A stretch of DNA of 64,000 bases from Diadema antillarum (Eukaryota), in the NCBI RefSeq assembly GCF_040938485.1, contig NW_027272059.1:806001-870000 (forward strand), given 5' to 3'. The notes beneath the pieces were generated by a model. That model was not told the DNA's origin, did no database searches, and saw only the letters and a list, made by a program, of their open reading frames with translations. This document shows, piece by piece, positions 5,219-58,600 of this stretch. A program made the position numbers and the translations under genes. How positions within the stretch are numbered: the stretch's first letter is position 1; each line of letters opens with the position of its first letter.

Positions 5219-6424
5219 ATCGTTGGTATCATCGAACTTATCATGCGCCGCGCTTCGATACAAAACAGTCTTCGCCAAGTCTTTGCCACAGTGCGTGCAT
5301 GCACGCTGGAAAAAAGTCTGCCCTTTCGCCTTCACTAGCCCGAGCGTGTATCACTAGCACGGCGCTGCTGGCGTGGCACGCTATCAAGTTTACAGCACTG
5401 GTTTTAGTCTAGCGGATATAGGGCACATATAGGGTGAATCATGCACATTATGGTAAAAGCACCATATTTGGTACACATGTATATGATGCCAATACAAGTC
5501 ATTTCTGATATGGAAGCCACTCTGATTCTGCCTGTGGCGGCCGTGGCGGCCATTTTTCAAAATGGCCGCCAATGGCCGCCATGTGATATAGCAATGCTGT
5601 GTATTTTGGAAACTATAAGTCCGATTGTCGTGATTCTTGTACCAAAGTATAGGTTTTGAGGGTCAAGGATTCCAATAGAATGATTTTTGAGAGGATAAAA
5701 CCATGGCAACCTACTTATTGGCGGCCATTTGAAAAAATATGGCCACCATGCTAGATATAACATAACCTTAAAACGTATGGACAAAGGGTCATGACTCTGA
5801 TACCAACTTATATGTTTTTGGCGTCAAGGACTCCGATAAATTCAACTGTAAGTGAATATGAATCGTTTCATCCTACGTTTTGGCGGCCATTTTAATAAAT
5901 ATGGCTGTCATACAACGGATAATGAATATTGTATATCTTCGAACTCAATGAATACATAATCACGATTCAAGTGTAAAAGTATAGATTTGGGGTGAAGGTT
6001 TTCAATATAATGATGTTTTAGCAAAGTGAGTAGGTTCATCACATCCTTTGTTTTGGCGGCCATTTAATAAATAGGGCCTCACTCCAGTTAAACATGGCTG
6101 CCGCTCTGCATTCTATTCATATATCTTTAAAACCAATGCATGCATCTTCATGATTCTGGTACAAAAACATGTTTTTGAGGTTCAATTATTTAAATGGATA
6201 CATCTTTTCGTGTATACAACCATCCTATGTTTTGGCTGCCATTTTGAAATATGGCCACCGCAATATATACTATACTGTACGTCTTTGAAACTAATTGGGG
6301 TCAATGATTTTAAACAAGCATTTGTTGATGAATAGAACTAACACATTTCGTTTTCATGTCCATTTTGATAAATATGACTGCCGCACTACATAGTGTATGT
6401 ACACACACACACACACATTATATA

Positions 6425-6897
6425 CAGTGTGGCCTAGAATTAACGGAAACGCGAGTTTTCGCAAATATCTGCACATTTGCATTATTTTGATGCCAAAATG
6501 AATGACATAGTTGTAGAGAATTCATCTAGAAGAAGAATGACACCAAAATCATCCGATTTGGTTGAGTAGTTTTCATTCTACAGATGTTTTTTTTAAAAGA
6601 CGGGTCGAGCGTAAATTTCTTAGCTCAATTCAACAAATTTCAGCATCGAACAAAAGCCACTTGGGAGACTAACAAAGAATTGAGGCCGCACATCACAATG
6701 TGGAATGCTTGAATAGGATTATTGTCGAAAATTGATCTTCAATTGTTGGGTAGTCTCCGTTGCTGAGCTTTGATAATAAAGTAAGAAATTAATGATTAAC
6801 AAAAACATGTCTAGAAAGAAAAGTACTCAACAAAATTGGACAATTTCGTTTTGGTTTTGGAAAAATATTCGTTTCCATTTTCTGAGGGGCCACCCTG
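6425..6897. mobile_element. Tc1/mariner-like MITE nested in the Academ element
   Basis: TA|CAGTGTGGCC ... GGCCACCCTG|TA; short TIR and TA duplication. Confidence 0.6.
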
Positions 6898-8066
6898 TAT
6901 GTATTATATATACACCCTCACTTGCCATATGTATTGTCCCATTGACAAGAATCGTTCACCTATCATTGGTAAATGAACCTCCTATGTCGTTGCGGTGTTT
7001 AGTTCTTTATTGTTCATTGATTGTTGTTGATTGACCATACCTCTATCACATTCACTATTCAAGTAGGTATTGAACATCACATAAGTACAATTGTTGCATA
7101 CGTGGAATACTAAAGATAATTATGTTGAATATCAAAGGTAGAATAAAATGGTGAGAATGGAAAAGAAGACTTTTCCCCAATTTTGGATGCATAGACAGGA
7201 GAGTACAATTAATGTACTGTCATAGTTTCCAGCCACAAAGACATGATTCGTATTGCAGTCTTATAAGACTGATTTCTAAAGTTTGTTTTCAGTTCTTGTT
7301 CATTATTTCATGGTATGACCTTGTCAAAACTGTTACACAAAATTATAAGGAATCATATGAAGGAATCGAATTAGCTCTGACAATCCGAAACAATATTGTT
7401 CCTTATCATCCATTGCTAAGCGGTGATGAACATGAATGCATAGATGCAGGTGCGCTTTAGAGAACGTCTTCAGTATTTCTACTGGTGCCGGTAAGTAAGA
7501 TTGATTTACTGAATATTTTATTCTGCAGTTTTATCTTCCAATAATTATGAACCTAAAAATTTGTATTTCTTTGAGGTTTTCCTTAAATTCATAAATTAGC
7601 ATAATTTTTCTTGTAGTTTATATTTTAATAGTAGAATCATGTGGACCTGCAAATGACAATTACATTTAAACCTATAAAGATGTATTGTATTTGCCGGAGA
7701 GATGATGAACTACAACACCTTACCGCCTTAGGGGTTCCGTTCCGGATTTGGATAAGGTTTACTCCCTAGCCTTTGATTAACCAAAAAAATGCCCGCAAGG
7801 AAGCGGAAGACTCGTGGAGGGCGGGGACGTCTTTCTACCCGTACAGGACCAGAAGGACCTGCCCACTGCCACTATTTACTTTATCGTTTGATGTACAAGA
7901 TTCAGTGTAGTTATAAGTATCAGAACAGCCTGGTCAATCATGGATTTTATAGACATACATATAGTGTGTTTACATTTGATGTAAGTGACCCAAGAAGTTT
8001 TAGAAGTTTTCTCACACTTAGTGTCATTTTTCCAAAGAAAACAGATGTACTAATTGGTTGGAAAGT

Positions 8067-8577
8067 ATGATTTTCATTCCATAGTCCAGGGACCAGAGAA
8101 AGCGAGAGTCTATATTTCTAGAAAATATATAATCTTGATTAATATGTACTTCAGACATGAAATTGTGAAGATCATGTTTTCCACATACACTGTACACAAA
8201 GAAATCCTATAAAGGAAGTTGAGCATATTTTCCAAAATGCTTACAAAGTTAACTATGCCCAGATGTCCCACATTACAATACTAAAAATGAGTGAACAAGT
8301 AATTGTTGACCCCTAAAACAAATGATTTTCATTCCATAGTCAAGGGACCAGAGAAAGCGATAGTCTATATTTCTAGCAAATATATAATCTTGACTAATAT
8401 GTACTTCAGACATGACATTGTGAAGATCATGTTTTTGACATACACTGTACACAAAGAAATCCTATAAAGGAAGTTGAGCATATTTTCCAAAATGCTTACA
8501 AAGTTAACTATGCCTAGATGTCCCACATTAGAATACTAAAAATGAGTGAACAAGTAATTGTTGACCCCTAAAACAAA
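8067..8577 (+). repeat. Direct tandem duplication, 2 x 255 bp
   Basis: TGATTTTCATTCCATAGT..CCCCTAAAACAAA begins at 8068 and again at 8323, with few substitutions. Confidence 0.9.
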
Positions 8578-10999
8578 CGTTTACACCAGAATCAATCCAC
8601 AATGGGCATCCCGCTGTCATAACACTCGTACGCTATTTATTAAATGGCCGCCAAAACAAAGGATGTGATGAACCTATTCATTTTGCTAAAACATCATTAT
8701 ATTGAAAACCTTCACCCAAAAGCTATACTTTTACACTTGAATAGTGATTATATATCTTTTGAGTTCGAAGATATGCAATATTCATCATCTGTTGTATGGC
8801 AGCCATATGTATTAAAATGGCCGCCAAAACGTAGGATGAAACGATTCATATTCACTTACAGTTGAATTTATCAGAATCCTTGACCCAAAAACATATAAGT
8901 TGGTACCAGAGTCATGACCCTTTGTCCATACGTTTTAATGAGATGTTATATCTAGCATGGTGGCCATATTTTTTCAAAATGGCCGCCAATAAGTAGGTTG
9001 CCATGGTTTTATCCTCTCAAAAAATATTTTATTGGAATCCTTGACCCTCAAAACCTATACTTTGGTACAAAAATCACGACAATCGGACTTATAGTTTCCA
9101 AAATACACAGCATTGCTACATCACATGGCGGCCATTTTGAAAAATGGCCGCCACGGCCGCCAAAGGGAGAATCAGAGTGGCTTCCATATCAGAAATGACT
9201 TGTATTGGCATCATGTACATGTGTACCAAATATGGTGCTTTTACCATTAAGTGCATGATTTTTTCTATATCCGCTGGACTATTTACAGTATTGCACTGAT
9301 TGCCCACATGTGGTTGATCGCACACCATGTTGTATTTCAACTCAAGATGGCGCTGTATCTTTTGATGTGCTCGCTGGACGGATCGGACTACTAGTACATC
9401 GAATCACAAGTTTGGAACCGGGTAGAGTTGCGGTAAAATAAAGTTGTTAACCAGACATAGTCACAGTAATGAATGAACATGAAGCAAATGGATATGAGTC
9501 CCCAAGAAGCAGAGCTTATGATTGGGGCCCATTATGAATGGACTTCTCGATCCCAGCTTAATCAAATGCAAAAGGAATTATCCAGTTTTCTCCTTTTCTT
9601 CTTGTCTTTTTGGAGTTTTTGTTCCCTGTTCCAGTGTGGTTTGAATTTACGATCTATGTTGAAGTTAGACAGGGTCACGATTATTATGTATTCAATTAAT
9701 GTATTAATTCAATATGGTAATTAACAACATCAGCATTCTTTTCATTCTTTTCCCGGTTTTCTTTCTTTCTTTTTCATTTTTATTTCCTTATGACTATCTT
9801 AATCCAATCGCTGTAGGAAATAAAAGCAAGAAAAACACAAGTGTTTTTTTTTTTTTTTTTATCAAGCAAGCTAACCACAAAATTCATGAAAATCAATAAA
9901 GTGGAATCAATGAAATGAAAAAACGAAAATGCTCCATAATTTGATCAAAATAGAAAGTTGAGGAGTGTTAAACATTCATGTCTTTTTACTTAATAGGCCT
10001 AACTGATGTTGTTTCACTGTCACATAAAAAGTTATTAGACTGTCTTAAACTTTAAACAAAAACCTTGACCGAATTCTTTTGTATAGAACAATAATTGAAG
10101 AGTTTTATCGCAAAACGAGCGAACTCCATTCTTGTTAAATTGAAATATTTGTGATTAAAGCTGAAAAAAACCCAACAACAACAACAACCAAGGAAAATAA
10201 TAAGAAAATACAGGATATTTTAAATCATAACTTTTAGAATATTCCTTGTTATGTCACAAGTGAGATATTACTGGAATGGTTACATTTTGTTATCTGATTA
10301 TGGACTTACTTTAGAAATGGCGCATAACTCATTTTGCAATAAAACTCTTTTAATTTAAGACACCTTGTACAGTTTTCACTGCTACTGAGTCAAAGACATG
10401 TTCCTATGTAGTGCAAAATCCATTAGCCAATATTTCCTACATCACTTTTTAATAATAAGTTAGACAGCAAATTTCTCTTCCGCTTTTCACACACCATTTT
10501 CATGCCAGAATTTGGTATCTGTGTGGATGAAAGGACACCTTCACATTAATATAATCTATGTGTTATGTGGGTTGAATAAAGCAATATCAATATAAAACAC
10601 ATCTATAAATATATTCAGTGAAAAATTGCGGAAATTACTACCGATATTGCTGCATTCAATGACATCACTCAATCCACACATATTATATTTGAATGAACTT
10701 ATCCTTTAAAATCCATTTCAAATGCCTGTAACAAATAATATCCTCTATCTTGGAGCATTTGAAATAGCATGATGTTTGATCCATACTGAGCAGAGAAAAC
10801 ATAATCTATTTGTCATATTTGTCATATTTGGCCCAAGTTATTGAAATTCCTTGCATCGGCCGATATTAAAAATGCCCCCTCTATATATACTCATTCAAAA
10901 GGAAACTGAAATTTTTTCTATTGCAATCTTATAATAATTAATATTCTACTGAATTGAATTAACCAGCTGTTATAACTCCTTATCTAAGAACCTATGTTT

Positions 11000-35009: not shown

Positions 35010-36930
35010 TCCTGTTGAGTTGTACCAGACCAGATTGGGATATACGCAGATTCACTGTCTTTTCTCGATAGTCGGAGCCAGGGTCAGCAGGGAAGTGTTA
35101 GACACTACATGCAGGCTGTGTGAAAACTCGAGCTCGAGTGGAGCCACAAATCAAGCAAGAAGGATCACCAGAGACACGGGACACGGCTCCCCAATCTGTG
35201 CCGTCTAAAAACAAAAACACGCCGGAGGAGCGGCGCAGCCTAGCCGACCGAAGACTTCAGATCCATGCACTGTTGAGCTCTCACTGCTCTCGTACTCCGA
35301 GCGGGTAAATTTAGTCCAGGCTAGAAGGCACCCAACCTTGTTTTTTGATATATACAATGTTTTTTGATGGTTTCTTGTCAATTCGAGGGTGCTGATTCCA
35401 AATCCGATTGATGCCACTCGCGTAACCTTGAGCATTTTCGGCAAAATGCAAAAATCCAAAATGGCCGCCAGATATGCTAATTCGGCCATGATAAACACAA
35501 TAATGTGCATTATATGACCAATTATTCCACCAAGCTTCGTACATTATTGTTCCTAGAGTTACTCCATCTGCATTTGCAAGCGAATTTTCATTTCATATAG
35601 GTTCATTTAGCATTTAAAGTTCATTTTTGTATTCAAAATGGCCGCCATTCCTATACTTATGTACTATATGAATGGCAAAACATATGCATGGAAATATAGA
35701 ACAAATTTACTGTATTTCCAGTCCCTTACCTACACTATCATAAAGTTTTGTATGTGCAATATGTTGGGTGTCACTTACAATATATAGGGGGGCTACATTA
35801 TGAGCATTTAATATTCATAAACCTTACGATGTTGAACACAATTTCTTATATATTTCATTTTGTCTCAACAAAAGTCTCGACAATATAAATTCACTAACGT
35901 CTCGCAAAGAATGAAAATACCATCATAGTCTATATGCCGGCTGAATATAAACATGTAATACTAACACAATATATCAAGGAGCCTAGATACATGGTATTTA
36001 TCAAATAATGTTGAAAATGGAGGGGAAGCTAGAAAGCAAAGCTTGTGATATGCATTCCCCTAAAACCATATTAACAAAGTACAGAAAAATCCTATACAGT
36101 AAGTGCAGAGATACGTGGTTGCAGACAAAAACACATCGGACGTTAATGGCACAACTAAAAACCCTTTACATTGTAGATTTTTTTTTTTCCAGCAAGGAGT
36201 TGGGGGGGGGGGGGGAGGGAGCAGTCCTGAGGCGAGTTCGAAATGGATCATAACCTCCATCACTTTGATATGATTTAATTTAGAAGTGCCGCCTTGATAT
36301 TATCGAGCAAACCTGATTTTCTTCTTGAATTAAAACAACAACAAAAACTGTTGAAGGCATAAACGAAACTGTCCTAATGCAATACCGTACAAACTGTTCA
36401 TTAAACATCAACCAAGGAGCAATGGGAGATACCTCTTTCAGTTCTCTCACAGTTCCCAGGTGTTGATAATACATGTATACACTTTGACATCATGATCTCA
36501 TTCAGTGTTGTCTTAAAACTAAAACTGTCATTTTTATTGTCTTTAAAGAACCCTTAATTTAATCGTATGTTTAGCAGCAGGCGACATCAGCCCCAAGTTT
36601 GCAGAATTCTCAGGCTAAAGATGCATATTAGTCCTGCAATTGTTTTAATTGTAACCACATCTGGTGATGTTCAGCACTTCCTCAGGGGTCAGAGGGCGAT
36701 TATTTGCCATAGAAACAGGATGAAGACATGAAGACTTGCTTGATCACCACCCGTTGAAGCCCTGTGGCTTTGTTGCCAGGCCAGAGATAGTGTTGTAGGT
36801 AACTTGGGTGGTATTAGAGATGACATCAGACCAGCATCTGCACCAACCTGTTTTGGGGTCAAAGCTTTCAAGTTACAGTAGGGAAATCTATAGGCTTGTG
36901 GGATTTCAGGCGCATTGATGGCAGGTTGTT

Positions 36931-37079
36931 CAAGGGGGCATTTCATGAAGTGTTTTGTCAGATCTTTTCTTTTTTACAAACTGTTATAAGCTATTAAATC
37001 CTTGCATCTGATTGGCTGAGAGCAAATTTGTCAGACAAATTTGTCCGACAAAATGCTTCATGAAATGCCCCCCCCCCCC
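36931..37079. mobile_element. Small MITE nested in Academ element 2
   Basis: GGGGGCATTTCATGAAG..CTTCATGAAATGCCCCC; similar in architecture to 41931-42086. Confidence 0.55.
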
Positions 37080-37089
37080 ATGCTATCGT

Positions 37090-37600
37090 GTTTGGAAGGT
37101 CAAGGTATGCGTTGACGGCACTGGTGACACTTGCCATCCTTTCCTTCCAGTGTGAGGGAGAGTGATTGAGTGCCAGTGAAGGAGGGTGGACTTCCTTAGC
37201 CTATATGATATGCTTGGAAGGCTTGCCACAGAGGGCTGCCTTGAACATGACGTTGGCAAGATGGTTACTAAGATGGAATGCATGGATCTGATGATAATCT
37301 AATAAAGGTTGGGGCAAAGTCTCCAGAAGATGAAGTACTCCACTATTGTCTTGAGATGGGTCAGTACTCGGCTCATGTCATCCAAGGACTTTAACCCTGA
37401 GACGTAAAGGCAAGATCATCTGCAAACTTCCTACGTGAAGTGAATGTAATGTCACCACATATATGTTAAAAAGACCTCTAGTGGAGTTAATTTACAGCCA
37501 CCATTAAGGAGGCCATCATTCAGAGTCCTAACACAGCTGGTCTGGTTACCGAGAGCAATCCTGAATCTGAAGATTAAAGACAAGCAGTGTGAAGTTGTTA
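37090..37600 (-). pseudogene. Degenerate LINE reverse-transcriptase fragment (Vingi/Ingi-like) inside Academ element 2
   Basis: Manual minus-strand translation across frameshifts and stops gives FRIALGNQTSCVRTLNDGL, LFNIY, RKFADDLAFTSQ..VEYFIFWRLCPN and AFHLSN. This is the RT domain 4-7 order typical of Ingi/Vingi elements. Confidence 0.65.
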
Positions 37601-39741
37601 TAACACTGCTTTCAGAATAAGGCAGCACTGTACAGATCTCAGAGTCTCCCTCGACATCATAGGCCTATACTCAAACACATTCACTCCGAAAAAAAAAAAG
37701 CGTGGTAAAATTCATCTACCATGTTCATCTGGGTTAACATAAAAAAACTTTGGGGCATTGTCTTCATTTCAGAGATTTGACAACAGGAAGTGAGGTGGTC
37801 CCTTTTTCCACTTTCCCCTGCCTCATGTTCTTTCTCGGATGAGGGGACTGAAAATTTTGTATAATATCGCTTTTAGATAATGTAGAACAGGACAGTTAAT
37901 TGGAAATTTCATTTGTGTCATCATCTAGGATTCAGCCTTTTAATTCAGTAAATCAGAATGAATATTTTGATGTTGAACATCTCAAGGAAAGTAAGTATCA
38001 AATGTTCATATCTAATAATTCCTGATAAACGATCTTGATGTTGGCGTCAATTCAAGTTTTGGTGGATTTTTCCAAATACCTAGGGAAAATTTCAGGTTGA
38101 GGTAGCAAATTTGGATGTTTGCATAAAAAAAAATAAAACAGCCTTTGTTAGTAACAACCTTCTGATTTATAGTCAGCACACAAATTGGTAAACAGTGTAC
38201 CTGAGTGACAGAAAAAAAAAAAAAAAAATTTGTTTATTTCACAAGCTCTGCCGTTCATATTGTGCAGGGGTATATTAGTGGCGTCCATTTTGAAGTTTTG
38301 TATAAAGAAGAATATAATAAGCCTAAAAACAATAAACTTTCTGTTTGTTTGCTTTTTTGTTTGCTTGTTTTGCTAGTGGCACTCATCAGATTTGCATTGC
38401 ACATGCAAAACTTGATAAAAGCGTAGGTATGTGACTGGAAATTCGTCTTCTATTTCTATGCATATTTTTTGCCATTTATATAGTACATGAGTATAGGAGT
38501 GGCGGCCATTTTGAATTGAAAATAAGCTTAAAATACTAAATGTACCTCTTCAAATGAAAAATTTCTTGCATGTGCAAGTAGAATTACTCAAGGAACAAAA
38601 ATTTTAAAAACTTTGATGGAATAATTTGTCATAAAATTGACATAACTGGGATTATCATGGCCAAATTAGCATATCTGGCGGCCATTTTGGATTTTTGCGT
38701 TTTGCCGAAAATGCTCAAGGTTACGCGAGTGGCATCAATCGGATTTGGAATAAGCACCCTCGAATTGACAAGAAACCATCAAAAAACATTGTATATATCA
38801 AAAAACAAGGTTAGGTGCACTTTCTATGGAGCCTAGCCTGGACTAATTACAGAATACCGGCAGCCAATCACGGAGAGCGCAAATCGCTCTGAAAAGAGCG
38901 TAATTACGCTTGCCGATAGCAACCATCTGAAATATTAATCCGATCTGCGATACGGTCCGTGATTCGGCTGTCGACGATTGCATTTGTTTACGTGTGTTTT
39001 CTTTGATCTGTGCGGTGAGAAGTGTGGTATCTTACGTTGTTCTCGGGGGTTTCGGGGGTGTCCCCCGAATAATGTAGTTCTACATCCTGACGATGCTAGT
39101 CTAGACTAGCCGTTAAAATTTACCCGAATTTACGATGAATACTCACGTTTTTAGGAGTTGAGGATAGTCCGTATCCTAGAAATCGACAGCAATTTAGGTG
39201 AGACTAGAAAACAATCACTTATCTAATTGCTGGTGCTAGCTTACAGTAGAGCTTACGCACTGTGTGGGTGCTCTTGACAGCCCACCATGTTGACTCTATG
39301 CAGTCGTACAACAATACCTACACACAACAGCTTATGATGCGTACGTGTGCAGTGGTAGCGCGTATTGAGTCTGCAGAACGCGCGCATGTTTACTAGTACA
39401 GTGTACAATACGTGTAGCAGTTGAGTGCGCACATGTCTCTTGACAATACGCGTATACGCGCTGCCTTGCCAAACTAGTGAGTAGTGTGATTGATCGTGAA
39501 TGACTTGTGTCGAAAAGAGATGAAGGAAGGAGGATGTCAGCTGTGATGACGTCATCAAGTTTAAAGTAGTTCCGCCAAAATCGGCTCGATTTTCTTTACC
39601 GACGATTTACTCGAGTTATCTTGATTTAGAGCAGTTTTCCTCTGAAACCACTCAATTTTCATAAAAATTGTGTGGTCAACCTACTTTTTGACGGCCGTTC
39701 CGTTCCCGGGCTTTTTGGGGCCCCCAGACGACGGGAAAGAC

Positions 39742-39823
39742 GAATTTCAGCCCTTCGGGCTGAAATTCATCTCTAAGGGAGAGCCGCCGGAGGCGGGGCC
39801 GAAGGCCCCGCCTCCGGCGGCTC
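39742..39823. repeat. Two adjacent perfect hairpins with 3-nt loops
   Basis: GAATTTCAGCCC-TTC-GGGCTGAAATTC (~39742-39768) and GAGCCGCCGGAGGCGGGGCC-GAA-GGCCCCGCCTCCGGCGGCTC (39781-39823). Confidence 0.95.
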
Positions 39824-39881
39824 TTATACGCACTAATATGCTAATTTATATGATGCAAAACCGGTATTCTGTAATTTCCCC

Positions 39882-40230
39882 CAAAATTCCTGTTTTTTAG
39901 CCAATAATTTTTATTAAATTACTATTTACCCAAACAAATAATCCTTTTAATGAACGAGGTCAATATCATTGAGGGAGGGGAGCACCGAACTAAGTTCGGT
40001 GGAGGGCCCGCGCCGCGCCCGGGGGAGGCTAGTGAGGGATCATCAGAGCAGGGAGGGTCCCTGCTCTGATGATCCCTCACTAGCCTCCCCCGGGCGCGGC
40101 GCGGGCCCTCCACCGAACTTAGTTCGGTGCTCCCCTCCCTCAATGATATTGACCTCGTTCATTAAAAGGATTATTTGTTTGGGTAAATAGTAATTTAATA
40201 AAAATTATTGGCTAAAAAACAGGAATTTTG
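39882..40230. repeat. Perfect 349-bp palindrome (two 173-bp arms, GGG loop at 40055-40057)
   Basis: The arms read as exact reverse complements by eye from c39882/g40230 inward. The mirror-image ORFs 39922-40143(-) and 39969-40190(+) in the ORF track show the same symmetry. Confidence 0.97.
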
Positions 40231-40355
40231 TAAAATAAATTACAGTTTTATAAATACTTGTATGTGAAATATGATGAAAATAATATCAGAAATGATCTTA
40301 AAACATATTCATTCCTCAATGTACCCAATTCTGAGAAGCGCGATGGTCAAAAAAT

Positions 40356-43300
40356 ATGGAGGACAATTCAGATTCAACGCCGACTCTCGTAAACTGCTGT
40401 AGTAAACAAGCTGTAGAATCGGCTTGTCATATGGTTGTATCAACCATTCAGCTTGTGTTGGAGAAAAATGAGTATGAAGATGACTTCCGTGAACGTATCA
40501 AACAACGATTTAAAGAGGTACGTCTGTTTTATGTCGTATACAATCGTGACGCCTTCACCAATTATAAATCAGTCAAGAAAAGCAACCGCAAGACAGGGAT
40601 GTAGACAAACGTTGGTTAGCGGCCGTTGGCGTGCGCGTTGATTTCTATGCACAGTCGCTGTACTCTGTAGGTCCTATTATTTTGCACGTAAAGTCGCGAC
40701 AGGCTTCGCACGGCGTCATGTGTGTGTGTGAAGGACCGGTGTGATCGTGATCTGGGCCCCATTCCATAAAGAAGTTAATTGATGGAAGTTAAATAATAAG
40801 CAAGTTATTATTTTTTTTCTGTGCACTGGCGCAAGCTCTCACCGCACCGACCGCCAGTTTTCCCTTTAGGCTTTGAACAGTGTTGAAAAGCACATAAAAT
40901 TTTAAAATCATGGTTTGGAAATCCATCCAGTGTCACTGTCAGTGAATGGCAAATAAAATAGATTCAGAATGCTAGCACACTCATTCTTCCCAGATGTAAT
41001 TTCCCTTTGGAATAACCTCCCAAAAGAAATAATATTATCCAAGAGCACAGAAGTCTTCAAAACCAAACTAAAAAAGTCAAAGCTTTTATAAAACAAAAGA
41101 AACTTGTGTTACCACTCTCGTCAGCCCTGAGTTACCCTTCCTAGTGGAGGTCTTCGGGGATAACAACTACAAGGTACAAGGTACAAGGTATGTAACGATA
41201 GGCGTTAGGCTTAACGTAACCGCAGCAGCGACCCCAACACATACCAAGTACAGCGCCCCGTGCCGGGGTTATATATAGGCCTAACGTTACTGCGACCAGC
41301 AGCCCCATACGCATAGCGTTACGCTATGCGTATGGATGGGGCTGCTGGTCGCAGTTAGGCCTAACGTAGATTCTAGGCTATGTGTTAACAATGATTACTT
41401 GTATTACTAATGAGGATTTTCTTCCAATTCTTTTTTTCCTGAGATTATTTACCTGCATCCCCCTGATTTCTCTTGATTTCTATTCCATGCATACTTTTGT
41501 CATGATTTTATACGCGAGAAAGCCATTGCGCAAGCGCCAAGGGTGGTCGATCTAAAAATAGGTGGTTAATCGTGATGGATAGAAAAGTACTAGCTGTAGT
41601 AGTAGAACATAGGGTAAGAGCATGAAATTGATCCAAAGATATATTTGAATAATTCAGTTTTTCTTTTAGCTTTTAATATCCATAGACTCATGAAGAGTTT
41701 ATTTTCCATGCATGCCTCAAGTTATCATTTCTTCTCACACTTAACCTCCCGTACATCACAATTCGTTTCCCCTTCCTTGTGCCTATTTATATACACTTTC
41801 CAGTACTGGTACCTTCTTTACATCTCACCCATCTCCACACCTCATGACTCTTTTGTTCTGTTCCCATTCATGTTTAAGTTCAACTCATGATCACCTCATC
41901 TTTACTTTCCAATAGTTCTTTCTTTGACCTCAGGGGGATGTTTCATCAAGTTAGTCAGCGCTGACAAGTTGTCTGTCTCTGACATTCACCATGGTAACAG
42001 TCAGTGACCAGAGCATCTCAGCCAATCAAAACCAAGGATTTTGCTGAAATTGTCAGCGCTGACTAAATTGATGAAACACCCCCCTGGTCACACTCTTTTG
42101 AATAGCGTTTTGATTGGTTTGTGTAGTTTGTGATTTAAATACGCAAATGGAAAGAACCCTGTGGGTTCTTAATAAAGAATCAGTCTACCACTGGAACTCA
42201 CTGAGAGAGGACCTCCTTCTTCTGCCTAGGGCTCCCTTCTTTCTTTGAATGTTTGTTGGAGGTTGACTAAAATGCTGCTCAGCTTGTGGAGTGCCGAGTG
42301 AGTAGCTGATGATGATTTTGGACACCAGAATAAGTGTCACAGTCGACTAACTACATCTGGTCGTCAAGGATATGTTCTGCAGAGACTACGTCTGGCTTCA
42401 CGGAATCCCCTCCTCTACAGAGGAGAGCCGTAAATGTCAAAAAATGATGAAAAAGAAAAAAAAACAACAACCTGCAGAGGACATACAACAGATTTTTTCT
42501 GTCTAGAATGTAATCTAGTAATCTGTATTCAGTATTTGCAAACAAGTATAGAAGTAGAAGATCTAGTCTAAGACTCTAAGTTTGACATCTCCAAAGTTAA
42601 ATGTAAATTTTGCAGTGTGTGACTGGCATTCATGATTGACATCAATTATCATACCATTGAAGTTGTATGAAATTAAAAATAAATACAGTATGTCACATTG
42701 ACATCAAGCAGCTTGAATTATCAAATATTGACAAATGCCTTTGTTCCTGCAGGTGTATGAAAATGCTGTTCACTACAATGTGTCAGTTGAAGGTCAAACC
42801 TGGAGTCAAGCTATGGAGGAAGGAAACGTAACAAAAGGTATTCACCACTATGCACTCTCTGATTTCTCACTCTCAAAATGTTACCTACTTTAACTGTGTA
42901 ATTGCCTCCCCTTTCTTTTCTTCCTTTATCATCGATAGTGTAATGAATGCCAAGAATTCTTCAAGCTGGTTGGTCTACTGAATGGCCCTTTCTATATGCT
43001 TAAATCAGAAGACACAGTTACCACTGAATTTTCTTTCACATTTCTTATGTAATGGCCACAGGATTACACCTCACTGACTTGTTGTGTTGTGCTAAATGGA
43101 ACAGGTGCCATAAAAACCTCAAGTAATACAGTACATGCCAGTGATTATAAAGACTTTAAGTCTTCTTTGTCAATATACATGTACCGGTATCATACTGTAT
43201 GCTTACCCAAAAGATGGGGAAAAATGCTTTGCATCAATGTCTGCATCAAGTTTGTTCCTCCATTCATGTATTTGTTTGGGTTGCAGATTTGTCAAAAGAT

Positions 43301-52648: not shown

Positions 52649-55600
52649 TTAATTCCTGGTAGAATTGAGGAAGTGGAGAAGCTGCTCTCGATTTTTGTCC
52701 CGCTGTAGAGGGAGACAAAGACAACAGAGGGACTGCTGAGATGAAAGTTACTGGAAACTGGTGAGGAAGCATGGAATACATAGCTAATTGTATTGGGTCA
52801 CACCATAATCCATTGCGACACCTTGGCAGTGGTTTCAAACCATACTGCAATGCTGCACACTGGCACTGGTCTAACGGTCCCTGACCACTAAAATTAATCA
52901 ATGTCAGACCAGTAGCTTTTCAGAACGGACCGCTAAAATATGGAAAAACTTACAGATTGTGTGGACAATGATATAAAATATAAAGGGAATTCCACAAAAA
53001 TTCATTTTTTATGAAAATTGCACATTCCATCAACTTGATACTGACATATGTTAAGGGTAGAAATTATTACCCCTGCTTTCTGAAAACGGTTAGTCAAGTG
53101 CTCTTTCATTATGCTAGAAAAGTGAATTTTTGTGGAATTTTCTATATATTTTCTTTATATGGTTGTCCACACATACGTCATAACCTCTACAGTAGTAGTC
53201 TCCTCATCCAGCAGTTCCAACACCAAAACTTTGAAAATTCATAACTTTTGCATCGTTTATCCGATTTTCCTCAAACTTTCACTAATGTGTTCTACTAATG
53301 TTGCTGCTTTCACTCAATCCACATTGCTCTTTGGGTTTGGGTTCCCTTTAATGATCATACAATTCTATAAGGAATTCAATGTTTATTTGATGAAAATTGA
53401 TTTTTAAATGGCTGAGATATCCATAACCAAAGTAAAACAAAGCGATCCTAACAAAAAGTGGGTCCCACCTTTTATTAGGATCACTTAGTTTGGGATATCT
53501 CAGCCATTTCAAAACCAATTTTCATCAAATAAACTTTGAATTTCCCTAGAATTATATGCTCTTTCATATTTCACAAGAGGTTTCTCATTATCTCCGAAAA
53601 ATCATCATCAAAAAATGTTGGAAACCTGAAGCCCCACCTTGACTGAAACTGCACCTCCCCTTTAAAGTGAAAACTTACTGCTTTGTCTGAACTGCTCTTC
53701 TTCACCTTCATCTTGATCTTCTGGCCGGAGACTATACTTCTGCCTGTTTCTGGCTTCATGTACTATTGGTAAAAAAGGAAGGTTTTTTAGTGTGTAAAAC
53801 ACTGTAAATTCATTAAAATCAGACAGACACATGATATTCACCTTGATACCATATACCATAAAATGCAAGTGGAAACTTAGTGACATCATAACAAGAGTTT
53901 GGCATCTACCCTGTTAATGTGATTGTATATTTTGTCAATGCAAGTTGCATTAATTCTGGTTGGTGTTTAAAAATATGACAAAATGATGATTTACTTCTCT
54001 TTTATCATAAGAGATGATAACATACACTAATGAAGAAATGCTACTTGTTGGTAGCAAGTGATATTTTCATTCATAGTGACTAGGACCGCAAAAAATAAGT
54101 CTTGCCACTTGTCATTAACTTGTCTAAAGTAATTCAGCATGGTACACAGTACATGTAGAACTTTTGTTATCTGTAGAGTACCAGGTGTATGACAAAAAGT
54201 TTGGAACAGCGAAGGTGACGTAATGACTGCTCTCATTGATAGTTTGTCATGCCGCAGATTTAAATTCATATAGGTAACTTTTGTAACACAGAATCTGCAT
54301 TCTCGCCAAATGACTAAATACAAGGTAAAATGAGGTTTGCATTTTCATTCACAATGCCATTACTGCAGTGCAATAGACATCAAGTCCTGCATGTGTATTA
54401 TTAGCAGGTTTTTGTTGAGATCCTTCATTATCAGGAAAATCTCAGTCCAAATGATCTAGTTGCAACGTGACATAAACCTACACATACGCACCTGTGATAA
54501 GCGAACAGGTCCACTGTCATTTTTGCTATCTTTCTTCTTCTTTGTCTTCTTATGTTTCTGGTAAAGAGAGAAACACAATACCTTCATCATTCATATCTTT
54601 TGATTCAATATCTGTGCTCTACCAAAAGCACTTGATAACAAACTCACTGATACAGTTTGAAGTAGGTGTACACCTCTAGTTCTTACTGGAAAGGATATGA
54701 AGGCTGATAAAATATTACCGGTAAATGTTCACGAAGACCCATGTGGAAGATGCTTACTACGAGGATTTTTCACATTTTTGCCCCCGAACTGCCAAAAGCC
54801 GTATAAAAAAATCAGTTAACTGCATATGGCTGTCTCATGTGTGTGTGTGTGTGTGTGTGTGTGTGATATTTCTGCCGTGTGAATTGTGGAGGGAAGGGAA
54901 GGATAAGTGGTTATGCAAGTGATAAGGGCATGGGGTGGGGATATTTGGACTTGGGAAATAAAGGGGATGGGAGGAATGAAGGATGTCTGTTTGGTATTGG
55001 ACTGGATTTAAAGGGGGAGTGGAGATGTGAATATTGAGGGTGTTTGATGTTTTGGATAGTTGTAAAGGTATAGTATTAGGAACGGTAGTTAGGAAAAATT
55101 GGTCTGGAGATGGGTTTTATTTCAGATACGATATACATGTACAGTCAACCTCGCATAAGTCAAATAATCACCTTAATGCTTTCCAAGTCCTCTTCTCTTT
55201 ATATTCTATCGATTTTAATCCCTCATGAATTAAATCTTCTCTAAATCAACGCTATTTCTTCAGTCCAAATCGATTTGACTAAGGCAAGGTTGACTGTATT
55301 TCCACTTTTTTTTTTTTTTTTTTGGGGGGGGGGGCGGTAATTTGCTGTACTATTTTCATTTCATCTGTTACAACAAAAATGGAATGTGAGTCTCAATTGA
55401 TACCTTTGTTCATTTCCATTCCCAAGTGCAGAAATGTTACTAAAGGAATTATTTTAGATACATTGCCTGGGAATACCAAATTGAATCGCTGTTAGAGTAT
55501 AATTTGGATGGAAGTGAATAAATATTATTGGGGAAAAAAGTGATAGGCAAAAGTGTGTGTTTCTTTGTCTGGTTCATATCATCCCTGTATCAGCCAACTC

Positions 55601-58600
55601 TGCAATATAATGTCCATAAATACAGAACGATTTGCTTTACCCATGTAAAATCAAGTAAAATTTACTGCTTCTCTCAGTGAGTAAGGGTTGTTTCAAAACC
55701 CTAGATGAACTAAAGGGATAATTACATGGTCTACGTAAATACTGGTCGGTGACTGGCCATGATGCAATCGCATGACTAATGCAGCGAGGATAGAAATTGT
55801 TACACATATGGTATTGCCAACAGTGATGTCACTTCAAGTAACATAATTCCAGAATTCAACTGGCTGAAGACAGAATGAGTAATACACAACTTTGTAATCA
55901 TCCACACTGGTGTGATTCTATGCTACAATGAAATTATGTGTTTTTAAATAGATCATGCAGAATAACAAATATTGCCTCAAATATTGTTGCAATATAACTC
56001 TTGTCATCAGTTTGTTCCTCGGGATTTTATATTTTTTTCCTTGAGAAAATATTTTCCTGAAGCCTGCAGCACTTCAGGAAAATATAATCTATTAAAAAAA
56101 TATATAACTTCTGCAATGATGATAAGTGTAAATATATTACTGTGGGAATATGGACATTTCTGTATAAGGTTGTCAAAAGAAGAATGCAATAATGGTATGT
56201 TAAAAGACACCATAGTAGGGGAACACCTCAAGCTGCCAAACATAAATCAAAGTACAGCAAGACTAAGGACCTACTGTTCACTGGTCCATGATGAGACCAA
56301 ATCACTAAGTTTAGCTGTGGGGCTTTAGTAATCCCACACTGAAATAAAGCAGTCCCGAGATAATGATAATCCCTTTTGTTCATCAGGTTAAGAGATTTGC
56401 ACTCAGTAAATTTTGTATTTATATCAAACATTGAGTATCATAAATATATCTTTATAATTAATGTGCATGTTCTGAAAATGATACACGCATATGAAGGGAT
56501 ATGTGATAGTTTGGTCAGTGGTTAGTCTCTAGCTTGGAAAATGCTTACTTTGAGAAAAGACATATGGCCATGCTGGAGAACGACAACACAGGATGAGCCA
56601 TGCAGGCTGCTGATTGGAGAGCAGAATTTCATGTATTGGCTACATTGAGGTATGTACGATAAGTATTGCAGTTTGTTATTATTTGCTAATTTATCATTTG
56701 GAAAGTTAATGCTTTGTTGTTTGATTCATTTGATTCATGGACAATGATCAAATTGTTTCATAGCACACATTTAATGCTGGACAATGGCAAATGATGAAGT
56801 CATGACATTATGCATCAATGGTACGGGCAAATAGAAACAGTGCTCAGTGTTTAAGACTGTTCTTTTTTGTTCTTTGCAGAGGTTTTCTTCTCTCCCATTT
56901 TCTTCTCTACACCCGTTTCCTTCTTTCTGGATGTTGAGACGGTATTCAGTTATTACAGCCATGATAAATCCTGTTCAACCATACAATCATAAGTCTTGGT
57001 GTTTTCTTTGGTAGTGCTTATCTTGACATACAACCCCTTTCCAAGCTACATTATGCCTCTAAAAAGGCAATATCTGTATTATGTCAAGCTTTAAAAGACA
57101 AGTTCACCTTCATAAACATAAGGATTGAGAGAATGCAACAATATTAGTAGAACACATCAGTGAAAGTTTGAGGAAAATTGGACAATCGATGCAAAAGTTA
57201 TGAATTTTTAAAATTTTTGTGTTGGAACCGCTGGATGAGGAGACTACTACAGCTTGTGAGTCATATGCGTTCAACAGTATAAAGAAAATGTAAAAGAAAA
57301 TTCAACATATTTTCACTTTTTTCGCATAATAAAAGAGCTCTTGACTTGCCTCTTTCTAAAGGCAGGGGGAATAATATTGCCCATAACATTTGTCGGTAAC
57401 GAGTCAGGGGAATGTGTACTTTTTTCAAAAGATGGAATTTTGTGAAATTCTCTTTACATTTTCCTTATATTGTTGTACGCAAGTTATTCATACACTGCAG
57501 TAGTCTTCTCATCCAGCAGTTGCTGCACAAAAATTTTAAAAATTCATAACTTTTGAACGGATTGTCTGATTTTCCTCAAACTTTCAATGATGTGTTCTAC
57601 TAATATTGCTACATTCTCTCAATCCTTATGTTTATAAAGGTGAACTTGTCCTTTAACCAGTGTACTTATCACACACATATGTCTTCACAGTTCCTGTAAT
57701 CCAAAACAAAGTGTACACACAAAACATGTTGTAAATAACAATGGAAAGCAACACAAGCATTCCAAAATGAAAATTTTGCAATAGGGAGTAATTCAAAAAA
57801 TGAAAAGAGGTTTCAGATTATTTTGACACATACCTTCTCTTTTTTCTTTTCTCGCTTTCGTTTCTTCTTTTTCCTCTGCTTCTCTGTAAATGTTAAGGAT
57901 TAAAGGCAATAATAAAAAATTCCTGTAAACATGAAGAGTAATGCTTATACAGAATTTTCAGAGTGCAAGTCAATATCTATTTTAATCTAAGCTTTTCAAC
58001 GTTAAGTGACTAGATGGCCAAAAGCAATGACTACACTTGCAATTAGATCTTACCAGTGCCCTTGCCACCCCCAAACACAGCGTATGTGCAAGCTGTTGTT
58101 GGACAGTGGATTACCCAAATACATCTTCTGCATATGTTTCTTCAGTACAGAAGACCTGCAACGTGTTTGCTGATTTACTTCGTTCACTTGGCTCACCCTC
58201 AATTACGTCATTACTGTATCATGAGAGTATAGTTACCTTGCACACACTGTTACATTCCTCAAAGGCTGATCACAAAAAAAGAAAAGAAAAAAGAAAAGGA
58301 GACAAGTGAAAGTAACAGGTTGGAATATTAATAACAGTCAATGAAAATCTACCACATATGTAGGTGCATATTATACCTATACTAGAGTCACTTGTAGAAC
58401 TGTCCGAATCACTTGTTCCCGAGGTTGAATCACTACTGCTGCTCTCTGATGAATATTTTGTCTTTTTCTTCTTTTTATGTCTCCTCTTGGCTACATCCTC
58501 CCTTTCACGAGAAGCGGAAGAAGGCGACGAACTGGAGCTTCTGGATCTATGCCTCTTACGATTCTTTGACCTATGCCTACTTGAGTCTCGTGAGTGACTG

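What the first reader, a model, noticed from the sequence alone, without database searches (positions are those of the whole stretch)
39882..40230. Perfect 349-bp palindrome 126 bp upstream of the NSL1 start, in the TATDN3/NSL1 divergent promoter
Seen: two 173-bp arms with no mismatch I can find, a 3-nt GGG loop, a GC-rich core, AT-rich outer arms, and an internal CACCGAAC-TAA-GTTCGGTG hairpin in each arm. Pairing continues imperfectly outward (TGTAATTT/AAATTACA). Established: perfect palindromes of this length with tiny spacers are unstable, extrude cruciforms and are rare in animal genomes. Inference: it is very young or actively homogenised. It could be a tail-to-tail junction of a hairpin-ended mobile DNA, a cruciform-forming element next to the start site of a kinetochore gene, or a source of ~170-bp hairpin RNA from either strand.
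Basis: partly seen in the sequence, partly recalled or inferred. Interest (0 to 1): 0.75.

Follow-up and report, generated by a model that had tools for sequence, protein, structure and literature searches.

The report
Young fold-back copy of NSL1 promoter DNA
A flawless 349-letter mirror-image stretch just upstream of a sea-urchin kinetochore gene is real and single-copy, and is best read as a recent repair or replication accident that copied promoter DNA backwards onto the end of a neighbouring jumping gene, not as a mobile element.

Summary
Arms 39882-40054 and 40058-40230 are 100% complementary around a GGG spacer.

It is not a repeat family. One 172-nt contig at about single-copy depth covers an arm in the best-matching run. 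DNA just to the left runs at 40-150 times that depth.

That DNA is a roughly 1.04-kb transposon with 21-nt terminal inverted repeats. Its left end is split by a nested Academ-like element. Other copies diverge exactly after 39881, one base before the palindrome begins.

In a related species, contigs run from NSL1 exon 1 through 40230 to about 40130 without a break. So the right arm's outer part is ancestral promoter DNA, and the left arm is a later inverted copy.

Best reading: a templated fold-back (snap-back or template-switch) duplication at a break at the transposon end. A 9-nt microhomology just outside the arms fits this (chance 0.2-0.6%).

Hairpin-ended mobile DNA and MITE readings are not supported. 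Cruciform formation and hairpin RNA were not tested, because no RNA run was found. An assembly artefact is unlikely but not formally excluded.

The scan has noted other perfect palindromes in this genome. One (s1-229767) was read as a fold-back at a small natural hairpin. This locus had not been noted before.

The parts
39882..40054 (.). Left arm, read as the derived inverted copy of 40058-40230.
   Evidence: It is 100% complementary to the right arm. It begins one base after the point where other copies of the neighbouring transposon diverge (table 7). One 172-nt contig in X1 covers 39882-40053 with 0 mismatches at depth 28.8, against 25 for single-copy DNA (table 8).
40055..40057 (+). GGG spacer at the centre. 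With the innermost stem it forms caggga-ggg-tccctg, the proposed snap-back seed.
   Evidence: Sequence. The X1 arm contig ends at 40053, which is the branch point expected of a true palindrome in a k=31 graph. The depth of bin 40036-40102 shows that unlisted contigs cover the centre.
40058..40230 (.). Right arm, read as the original. Its outer AT-rich part (about 40130-40230) is ancestral NSL1 upstream DNA.
   Evidence: Contigs of the related organism B run unbroken from NSL1 exon 1 across 40230 to 40130-40140: X3 record 24 and X4 records 30 and 31, at about 90-96% identity.
39973..40139 (.). GC-rich core of the palindrome (82 + 3 + 82 nt), carrying one CACCGAAC-TAA-GTTCGGTG hairpin per arm (39983-40001 and 40111-40129). 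Its origin is not resolved.
   Evidence: Nothing from organism B lies on 39902-40102 at 85% likeness or more.
39869..39877 (+). ctgtaattt, a microhomology partner lying inside the transposon's right terminal inverted repeat, 4 nt outside the left arm.
40237..40245 (+). aaattacag, the matching microhomology partner in the unique right flank, 6 nt outside the right arm.
   Evidence: A 9-nt or longer inverted match within 25-nt flanks occurs in 0.2% of random flank pairs from the window and 0.6% of AT-rich pairs.
38846..39881 (+). Main body and right end of a high-copy non-autonomous transposon. Its right inverted repeat is 39861-39881. Perfect 3-nt-loop hairpins lie at 39742-39768 and 39780-39824.
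   Evidence: Summed contig depth is 900-9000 against single-copy 25, 4.4, 58 and 37 in the four runs. Loose ends start after 39881 and before 38846. Inverted-repeat match. Hairpins.
35303..35311 (+). The remaining 9 nt (gggtaaatt) of the transposon's left inverted repeat, cut off from the body by the nested Academ-like element 35312-38845, which has an ATT target duplication.
   Evidence: In other copies the letters before 38846 read ..TAGGGTA (table 7).
40249..40256 (+). TATAAATA, a possible TATA box for NSL1, 19 nt right of the palindrome and 100 nt before the ATG.
   Evidence: Sequence only. This is an inference and was not tested.
40356..40520 (+). Putative NSL1 exon 1: ATG at 40356, with GT after 40520.
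   Evidence: ORF. The Pfam Mis14 hit is on a downstream exon. Exon 1 itself has no significant family hit.

Best explanation
The palindrome is a locus-specific, evolutionarily recent inverted duplication. About 170 nt of the DNA just upstream of NSL1 (the right arm) was copied in reverse complement and now sits between the original and the right end of an older transposon insertion.

Most likely sequence of events (inferred):
1. The DNA broke or was nicked exactly at the transposon's right end. Transposase cleavage would do this.
2. The flank's 3' end was resected and snapped back on a small natural hairpin (caggga-ggg-tccctg).
3. That end was extended along its own strand for about 170 nt.
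4. The extended end was rejoined to the intact transposon end, helped by a 9-nt microhomology.

A replicative template switch of the 1-4-3-2 type gives the same product, and I cannot tell the two apart.

The result is a by-product of repair, not a mobile or selected element. Its likely consequences are a tendency to extrude a cruciform, fragility, and a mirrored copy of proximal promoter DNA 55-400 nt upstream of the putative NSL1 start.

Shown: perfection, single-copy status, the exact junction with the transposon end, the right arm's orthology in a related species, and the microhomology. Inferred: the break, the snap-back seed and the order of events.
For: - The palindrome is perfect: 173 + 3 + 173 nt.
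- It is single copy. The X1 arm contig has depth 28.8 against 25 for unique flank, while the adjacent transposon runs at 900-3300 in the same run. No organism B contig lies on 39902-40102. There is no other copy in the window.
- Contig ends in X1 fall at 39882, 40053 and 40201. These are the branch points that a real palindrome produces in a k=31 de Bruijn graph (table 8).
- Organism B contigs cross 40230 unbroken, so B has no inverted copy of the outer arm and the right arm is the original. B differs from A at 8 or more sites in 40168-40226, yet the left arm carries A's letters at every one of them (table 3).
- Other transposon copies diverge after 39881, one base before the arm (table 7). 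The inverted repeat ends at 39881.
- There is no target-site duplication, either around the palindrome or between the transposon's two flanks. That fits a rearranged right flank.
- The microhomology ctgtaattt/aaattacag sits at near-symmetric offsets, with a chance of 0.2-0.6%.
- The mechanisms are documented. Fold-back templated inverted insertions at double-strand breaks involve synthesis at one end and NHEJ or alt-EJ capture of the other (PMC11724301). The four-point template-switch model has a 1-4-3-2 type that creates inverted repeats (PMC5453318).
Against: - The ancestral allele was not seen, so the snap-back seed and the original transposon-flank junction are inferred.
- Documented fold-back insertions are mostly 5-34 bp (PMC11724301), and the cited template-switch study (PMC5453318) concerns short, local events. 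A 173-nt copy is large by comparison.
- Homology with organism B stops at about 40130-40140, so the GC-rich inner 80 nt of the right arm is not shown to be ancestral.
- The transposon's CCCC end is kept, although simple microhomology joining at the 9-mer would remove it. A bulged annealing intermediate or a blunt join has to be assumed.
- All read evidence comes from assembled Logan contigs, not raw reads. No listed contig spans the centre. The best run may be from the sample that was assembled.
Confidence: 0.62

Rival explanations
1. Hairpin-opening ('giant P-nucleotide') footprint. A hAT-, Transib- or RAG-type transposase cut at the transposon's right end and sealed the flank into a covalent hairpin. 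The hairpin was nicked about 173 nt from its tip, unfolded, filled in and rejoined to the transposon end.
For: The geometry is the same as in the best explanation. The transposon end is kept to the base, and the centre would mark the old transposon-flank junction.
Against: A covalently closed hairpin gives a palindrome with no spacer or a 1-nt spacer, not an unpaired GGG. Hairpin opening normally happens within a few nucleotides of the tip (established knowledge of V(D)J and hAT chemistry). The transposon's superfamily is unknown. The 9-nt microhomology would have no role.
Confidence: 0.1
2. Assembly or sequencing artefact. The genome has only one arm, and the mirror copy was made by a fold-back read or a consensus error.
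For: Arm depth in X1 is about once, not twice, the single-copy depth. No listed contig spans the centre. X2 shows nothing on the arms. The best run may be from the assembled sample.
Against: X1 contigs end exactly at 39882, 40053 and 40201, which requires two contexts at both ends of the arm. A single arm would give one unbroken contig into the flank. Fold-back read artefacts mirror whole reads at random points. They do not produce 173 nt between two different unique flanks, and they are not seen at depth 25-30. Bin 40036-40102 has depth 31 beyond what the arm contig supplies. Once-over depth fits a palindrome on one haplotype, and a second allele, C at 40215, is seen at depth 11.
Confidence: 0.1
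3. Mobile fold-back element: a MITE or FB/TU-like transposon, or a junction of hairpin-ended DNA, inserted next to the transposon.
For: It has the shape of a palindrome with AT-rich ends. This genome holds many palindromic repeats.
Against: It is at single-copy depth in organism A, and nothing in organism B lies on the left arm or the GC core (39902-40102) at 85% or more. There is no target-site duplication. The outer right arm is contiguous, orthologous promoter DNA in organism B. No match turned up in the window or in the viral or metagenome scans.
Confidence: 0.05
4. Older palindrome kept perfect by arm-to-arm gene conversion or selection, because it works as a cruciform promoter element or a hairpin-RNA or miRNA source.
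For: It lies 19 nt from a TATA-like box of an essential gene. The centre gives weak miRNA-model hits: mir-185 at 36.8 bits and mir-1343 at 33.2 bits.
Against: The Rfam hits are far below gathering scores (60 and 51) and occur on both strands, as any perfect hairpin would give. Organism B lacks the inverted copy. It was not detected in a second sample of organism A. No RNA run holds the stretch.
Confidence: 0.06

Closest known systems
Fold-back (snap-back) templated inverted insertions at double-strand breaks; SD-MMEJ (PMC11724301, PMC2943611, PMC5728401)
   Same: An inverted copy of DNA next to a break, with a short unpaired spacer at the fold. One end is extended by synthesis and the other is captured by end joining. 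There is microhomology near the junctions.
   Different: The reported events are mostly 5-34 bp, while this one is 173 nt. The break is inferred here and placed at a transposon end. This is a germ-line allele in an animal, not an experimental break.
Short template-switch mutations, four-point model, type 1-4-3-2 (Loytynoja and Goldman 2017, PMC5453318). Such events also create hairpins and new miRNAs (PMC8794818, PMC10710096).
   Same: A copied fragment in reverse complement creates a new perfect inverted repeat in one step. Switch points can be assigned: 1 = 39881, 2 = 40230, 3 = 40058, 4 = 40055.
   Different: The copied fragment is much longer than the short, local events that study describes. 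Switch point 1 coincides with a transposon terminus, which a replication slip does not predict.
Fold-back transposons and palindromic MITEs (Drosophila FB, sea-urchin TU elements; recalled from memory)
   Same: Long inverted arms with a tiny spacer, in a genome rich in such repeats.
   Different: This one is single copy, has no target-site duplication, and has one arm that is orthologous unique DNA.
Large palindromes seeded by short inverted repeats after a break (Tetrahymena rDNA, yeast and mammalian gene amplification; recalled from memory)
   Same: A small natural inverted repeat next to a break seeds intrastrand pairing, and synthesis then yields a perfect palindrome with a short spacer.
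   Different: Those events give hairpin-capped chromosome ends and arms of kilobases to megabases. Here the copy stopped after 173 nt and chromosome continuity was restored.

Membership tests
Templated fold-back / template-switch inverted duplication | The new sequence is the exact reverse complement of adjacent DNA. | tested here: met
   The arms are 100% complementary over 173 nt.
Templated fold-back / template-switch inverted duplication | One copy is ancestral and the other is absent from the outgroup. | tested here: met
   Organism B contigs cross 40230 unbroken and cover 40130-40230. There is no branch at the arm border. This is shown only for the outer 100 nt.
Templated fold-back / template-switch inverted duplication | Microhomology at the switch points or junctions. 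| tested here: inconclusive
   A 9-nt inverted match lies 4 and 6 nt from the outer junction (chance 0.2-0.6%), but it is not at the junction itself. The inner seed caggga/tccctg is present but cannot be shown to predate the event.
Templated fold-back / template-switch inverted duplication | The ancestral allele differs only by the inserted copy. | not testable with these tools
   No ancestral allele could be read.
Fold-back transposon / palindromic MITE | Multiple dispersed copies. | tested here: not met
   Arm depth is 28.8 against 25 for single copy in X1, and nothing in organism B lies on the left arm or the GC core (39902-40102) at 85% or more. No second copy lies in the window.
Fold-back transposon / palindromic MITE | Target-site duplication flanking the element. 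| tested here: not met
   The flanks read ...atttcccc | ... | taaaataa..., with no direct repeat.
Junction of hairpin-ended linear DNA (viral or telomere-resolvase type) | The arms belong to a foreign replicon that continues on both sides. | tested here: not met
   The right arm runs straight into NSL1 upstream DNA that is shared with organism B. The left arm runs into a host transposon. No viral contig matched.
miRNA / hairpin-RNA locus | A match to a curated family at its gathering score, or evidence of expressed small RNAs. | tested here: not met
   The best Rfam hits are 36.8 bits (gathering score 60) and 33.2 bits (gathering score 51), on both strands. No RNA run was available, so expression was not tested.
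Transposase hairpin footprint (P nucleotides) | A palindrome without a spacer, centred on the excision site and a few nt long. | tested here: not met
   There is a 3-nt unpaired spacer and the arms are 173 nt.

The most novel reading that the evidence does not exclude
Cleavage at the end of this active, hairpin-bearing transposon family regularly triggers snap-back synthesis of the flank. If so, the family, or transposon ends in general in this sea urchin, would be a systematic generator of the long perfect palindromes that the scan keeps finding in this genome. Here it would have placed a segregating, cruciform-prone palindrome in the proximal promoter of an essential kinetochore gene.
Probability: 0.15. 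Interest if true: 0.6.

Novelty: new member of a known kind. Interest (0 to 1): 0.38.

Why it matters
Long perfect palindromes with tiny spacers are expected to be short-lived. This case carries its own before-and-after evidence: an orthologous single copy in a sister species, an exact junction with a transposon end, and a flanking microhomology. That shows how such a structure is born in an animal germ line, at a size well above what break-repair assays usually report. It also offers a natural allele for testing whether a 349-bp cruciform-prone sequence 100-450 nt upstream of a start codon affects an essential gene. For the scan, the message is that this is a structural mutation, not a new kind of element.

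Tried and rejected
- Exact look-up of the 82-aa exon-1 ORF in public assemblies, to fetch other alleles or species: nothing on record.
- Word search with the same ORF: no candidate.
- Metagenome scans with a conserved exon-1 45-mer and with a core 27-mer: no hits.
- Viral-contig scan with the internal hairpin: no hits.
- Rfam: only sub-threshold miRNA-model hits on both strands, the generic response to a perfect hairpin.
- Search for a continuation of the left arm beyond the transposon or elsewhere, to test 'transposon inserted into a longer palindrome': the 31-mer right of the arm occurs once only.
- Sensitive blastn of the arm against the window: only self hits.
- The scan's own notes, searched by sequence and by 'inverted duplication flank template switch': nothing.
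- The two mirrored 73-aa ORFs inside the palindrome are a trivial consequence of symmetry and were not pursued.
- A spliced NSL1 or TATDN3 protein was not built or searched. Exons were scanned separately by reference.
- A microinversion between haplotypes, mis-joined by the assembler, was considered and rejected. The right-flank contig would then break at 40231, but it runs from 40201.

Full report
**Observation**

The window holds a perfect palindrome. Arms 39882-40054 and 40058-40230 are 173 nt each and 100% complementary, and they flank a GGG spacer. Folded as single-stranded DNA, the region gives -291 kcal/mol against -77 +/- 6 for shuffles, z = -37.7. Each arm has an AT-rich outer 91 nt and a GC-rich inner 82 nt. 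Each arm also has an 8-bp hairpin with a 3-nt loop, CACCGAAC-TAA-GTTCGGTG, at 39983-40001 and 40111-40129.

**Gene context**

- The ATG at 40356 opens an ORF that ends at a GT after 40520.
- A downstream exon matches Pfam Mis14/NSL1 above its cut-off (31 bits against 24.9).
- Four minus-strand exons at 28.3-32.6 kb match TatD_DNase colinearly with the profile. A TatD-like first coding exon with a DCHCHL motif lies at about 34.9-35.0 kb but has no Pfam hit.
- So the head-to-head TATDN3/NSL1 setting is right. However, 4.6 kb of the 5.3-kb spacer between the genes is transposon.

**What lies beside it**

I laid Logan contigs of four runs on 38830-40830 at 85% likeness or more. X1 and X2 are organism A, from two studies. 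X3 and X4 are a related organism B.

- 38846-39881 carries summed depths of 900-9000. Single-copy DNA in the same runs carries 25, 4.4, 58 and 37.
- Other copies run on unlike the window exactly before 38846 and after 39881.
- The element has 21-nt terminal inverted repeats. The right one, 39861-39881, matches GGGKAAATTACAGAATACCGG with 0 mismatches.
- The outer 9 nt of its left end (gggtaaatt) sit at 35303-35311. They are cut off by a 3.5-kb Academ-like element at 35312-38845, which has 221-nt inverted ends and an ATT target duplication. This confirms the scan's note s1-224788.
- The palindrome therefore begins one base after the end of a young, abundant transposon about 1.04 kb long.
- Perfect 3-nt-loop hairpins with stems of 11 nt or more occur three times in the 64 kb, and all three lie within 39742-40230.

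**The palindrome itself is not a repeat**

- In X1, one 172-nt contig lies on 39882-40053 with no mismatch, at depth 28.8. The unique right flank is a 556-nt contig at 40201-40756 with no mismatch, at depth 25.
- No organism B contig lies on 39902-40102.
- Sensitive blastn of the arm against the window finds only itself.
- Scans of viral and metagenome contigs with core motifs find nothing.
- There is no target-site duplication.
- A MITE, a fold-back transposon or a hairpin-ended replicon junction is therefore not supported.

**Is it real?**

In a k=31 de Bruijn graph, a true palindrome forces three branches:
- one at the outermost arm word, so the flank contig starts at 40231 - 30 = 40201;
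- one where the other flank enters, so the arm contig starts at 39882;
- one at the innermost arm word, so the arm contig ends at the centre.

X1 shows exactly these ends: 39882, 40053 and 40201. A single arm would give one unbroken contig into the flank.

Bin 40036-40102 has depth 31.3, although the listed arm contig supplies only about 8 of it. So unlisted contigs cover the centre.

There are caveats. These are contigs, not reads. No listed piece spans the centre. X1 may be from the assembled sample. Arm depth is about once, not twice, the single-copy depth.

The once-over depth fits a palindrome on one haplotype. A short contig with C at 40215, the state seen in organism B, lies beside the reference allele at depth 11 in X1. 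It is the only allele in X2, which has no contig on the arms. X2 is only at 4x, so that hole proves nothing. I put the artefact reading at about 0.1.

**Which arm is original, and how old is it?**

- Organism B contigs run from NSL1 exon 1 leftwards across 40230 without a break, to 40130 (X3, 667-nt contig, 21 substitutions and 20 gap letters in 492 nt) and to 40140 (X4, two allelic contigs, 12-14 differences in 135 nt).
- So organism B has the outer right arm as ordinary upstream DNA and no inverted copy of it.
- Organism B differs from A at 40168, 40192, 40193, 40196, 40210, 40214, 40215 and 40224 or 40226. The left arm mirrors A's letters at every one of these sites.
- Zero differences in 173 pairs bounds arm divergence at about 1.7% (95%), against 4-10% between the species.
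- The copy was therefore made well after the species split, or was last homogenised then.
- Homology with organism B stops at the border between the AT-rich and GC-rich parts (about 40130-40140). Whether the GC core is ancestral in A remains open.

**Mechanism (inferred)**

The structure reads: transposon end | reverse complement of A | GGG | A | flank. This is what a fold-back templated insertion produces. The steps would be:
1. A break occurs at the transposon-flank junction. Transposase cleavage would keep the transposon end intact to the base, as observed.
2. The flank is resected.
3. The flank's 3' end snaps back on a small inverted repeat. The innermost stem, caggga-ggg-tccctg, would serve, and it explains the 3-nt spacer.
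4. The end is extended along its own strand.
5. The extended end is captured by the transposon end.

Yeast work describes this hybrid route: synthesis at one end, and NHEJ or alt-EJ capture of the other, for inverted insertions of mostly 5-34 bp (PMC11724301). SD-MMEJ papers describe snap-back priming (PMC2943611 and PMC5728401, listed).

In the four-point template-switch model, the same product is a 1-4-3-2 event, which creates a new inverted repeat (PMC5453318).

The 9-mer ctgtaattt lies in the transposon's inverted repeat, 4 nt outside the left arm. Its complement aaattacag lies 6 nt outside the right arm. Chance gives such a match in 0.2-0.6% of flank pairs. It probably helped to pair the two ends. 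Because the transposon's CCCC is retained, either a bulged intermediate or a blunt join has to be assumed.

The transposon's two flanks share no target duplication. That fits a rearranged right flank.

A hairpin-opening ('giant P-nucleotide') variant has the same geometry, but it predicts no 3-nt spacer.

**Function**

Nothing suggests a selected role.
- The Rfam hits at the centre (mir-185 at 36.8 bits, mir-1343 at 33.2 bits) are far below gathering scores and occur on both strands.
- No RNA run holds the stretch.
- By sequence, a TATAAATA lies at 40249-40256, 19 nt right of the palindrome. So the right arm is proximal promoter DNA and the left arm is a mirrored copy of it facing the transposon.
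- From established knowledge of long perfect palindromes, the expected consequences are cruciform extrusion under negative supercoiling, nuclease attack at the tip, and deletions that break the central symmetry. This agrees with the palindrome being young and possibly still segregating.

**Comparison and verdict**

This is a new example of a known mutational process, notable for three things: its size, its exact junction with a transposon end, and its place in the promoter of an essential gene.

The scan's notes list many perfect palindromes in this sea-urchin genome. One follow-up (s1-229767) read a 5.4-kb palindrome as a fold at a small natural hairpin, which agrees in kind with my reading here. 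I did not test that note.

The most novel reading still open is that transposon-end cleavage in this genome systematically seeds such palindromes. A survey of the flanks of all copies of the family would test it.

**Limits**

Exons were scanned one by one by reference.

Noticed in passing
window 35303-35311 + 38846-39881: High-copy (about 40-150 times single-copy depth in both sea-urchin species) non-autonomous transposon of about 1.04 kb, with 21-nt inverted ends GGGKAAATTACAGAATACCGG. No target duplication is visible for this copy. Its superfamily is unknown.
   Followed up: partly
window 39742-39768 and 39780-39824: Two perfect hairpins with 3-nt loops (12-bp stem with loop TTC; 21-bp stem with loop GAA) lie near the transposon's right end. 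Other copies carry a shorter version (GAGCCGCC-AGA-GGCGGCT), lack it altogether, or have the loop flipped from GAA to TTC (tables 5, 5c, 7). So the hairpin grows, shrinks and inverts among copies.
   Followed up: partly
window 35312-38845: Academ-like 3.5-kb element with 221-nt inverted ends at 91% identity and an ATT target duplication, nested in the left inverted repeat of the transposon above.
   Followed up: partly
window ~40207-40242: A second allele (C at 40215, as in the related species) appears as a very short contig that ends at the same place in two independent runs of organism A. Its structure further left is unknown.
   Followed up: partly
window 983-1917 and 1915-2027: Satellite of 157-159-nt units (about 6 copies, 78-98% identity), followed by an ACGG/ACAC microsatellite.
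   Followed up: no
window 5427-6074 / 8633-9270: A 3.8-kb element with inverted ends of about 650 nt (93-96% identity). It contains a 255-nt tandem duplication at 8067-8576 and 13-bp perfect hairpins TGGCGGCCATTTT at both ends.
   Followed up: no
window 57091-57320 / 57427-57656, related to 53189-53320: Imperfect 566-nt palindrome (230-nt arms at 84%, 106-nt spacer). Its arm recurs at 53.2 kb, so it is MITE-like.
   Followed up: no
window 41305-41335: Perfect 15-bp stem with a 1-nt loop (CCATACGCATAGCGT-T-...) in NSL1 intron 1.
   Followed up: no
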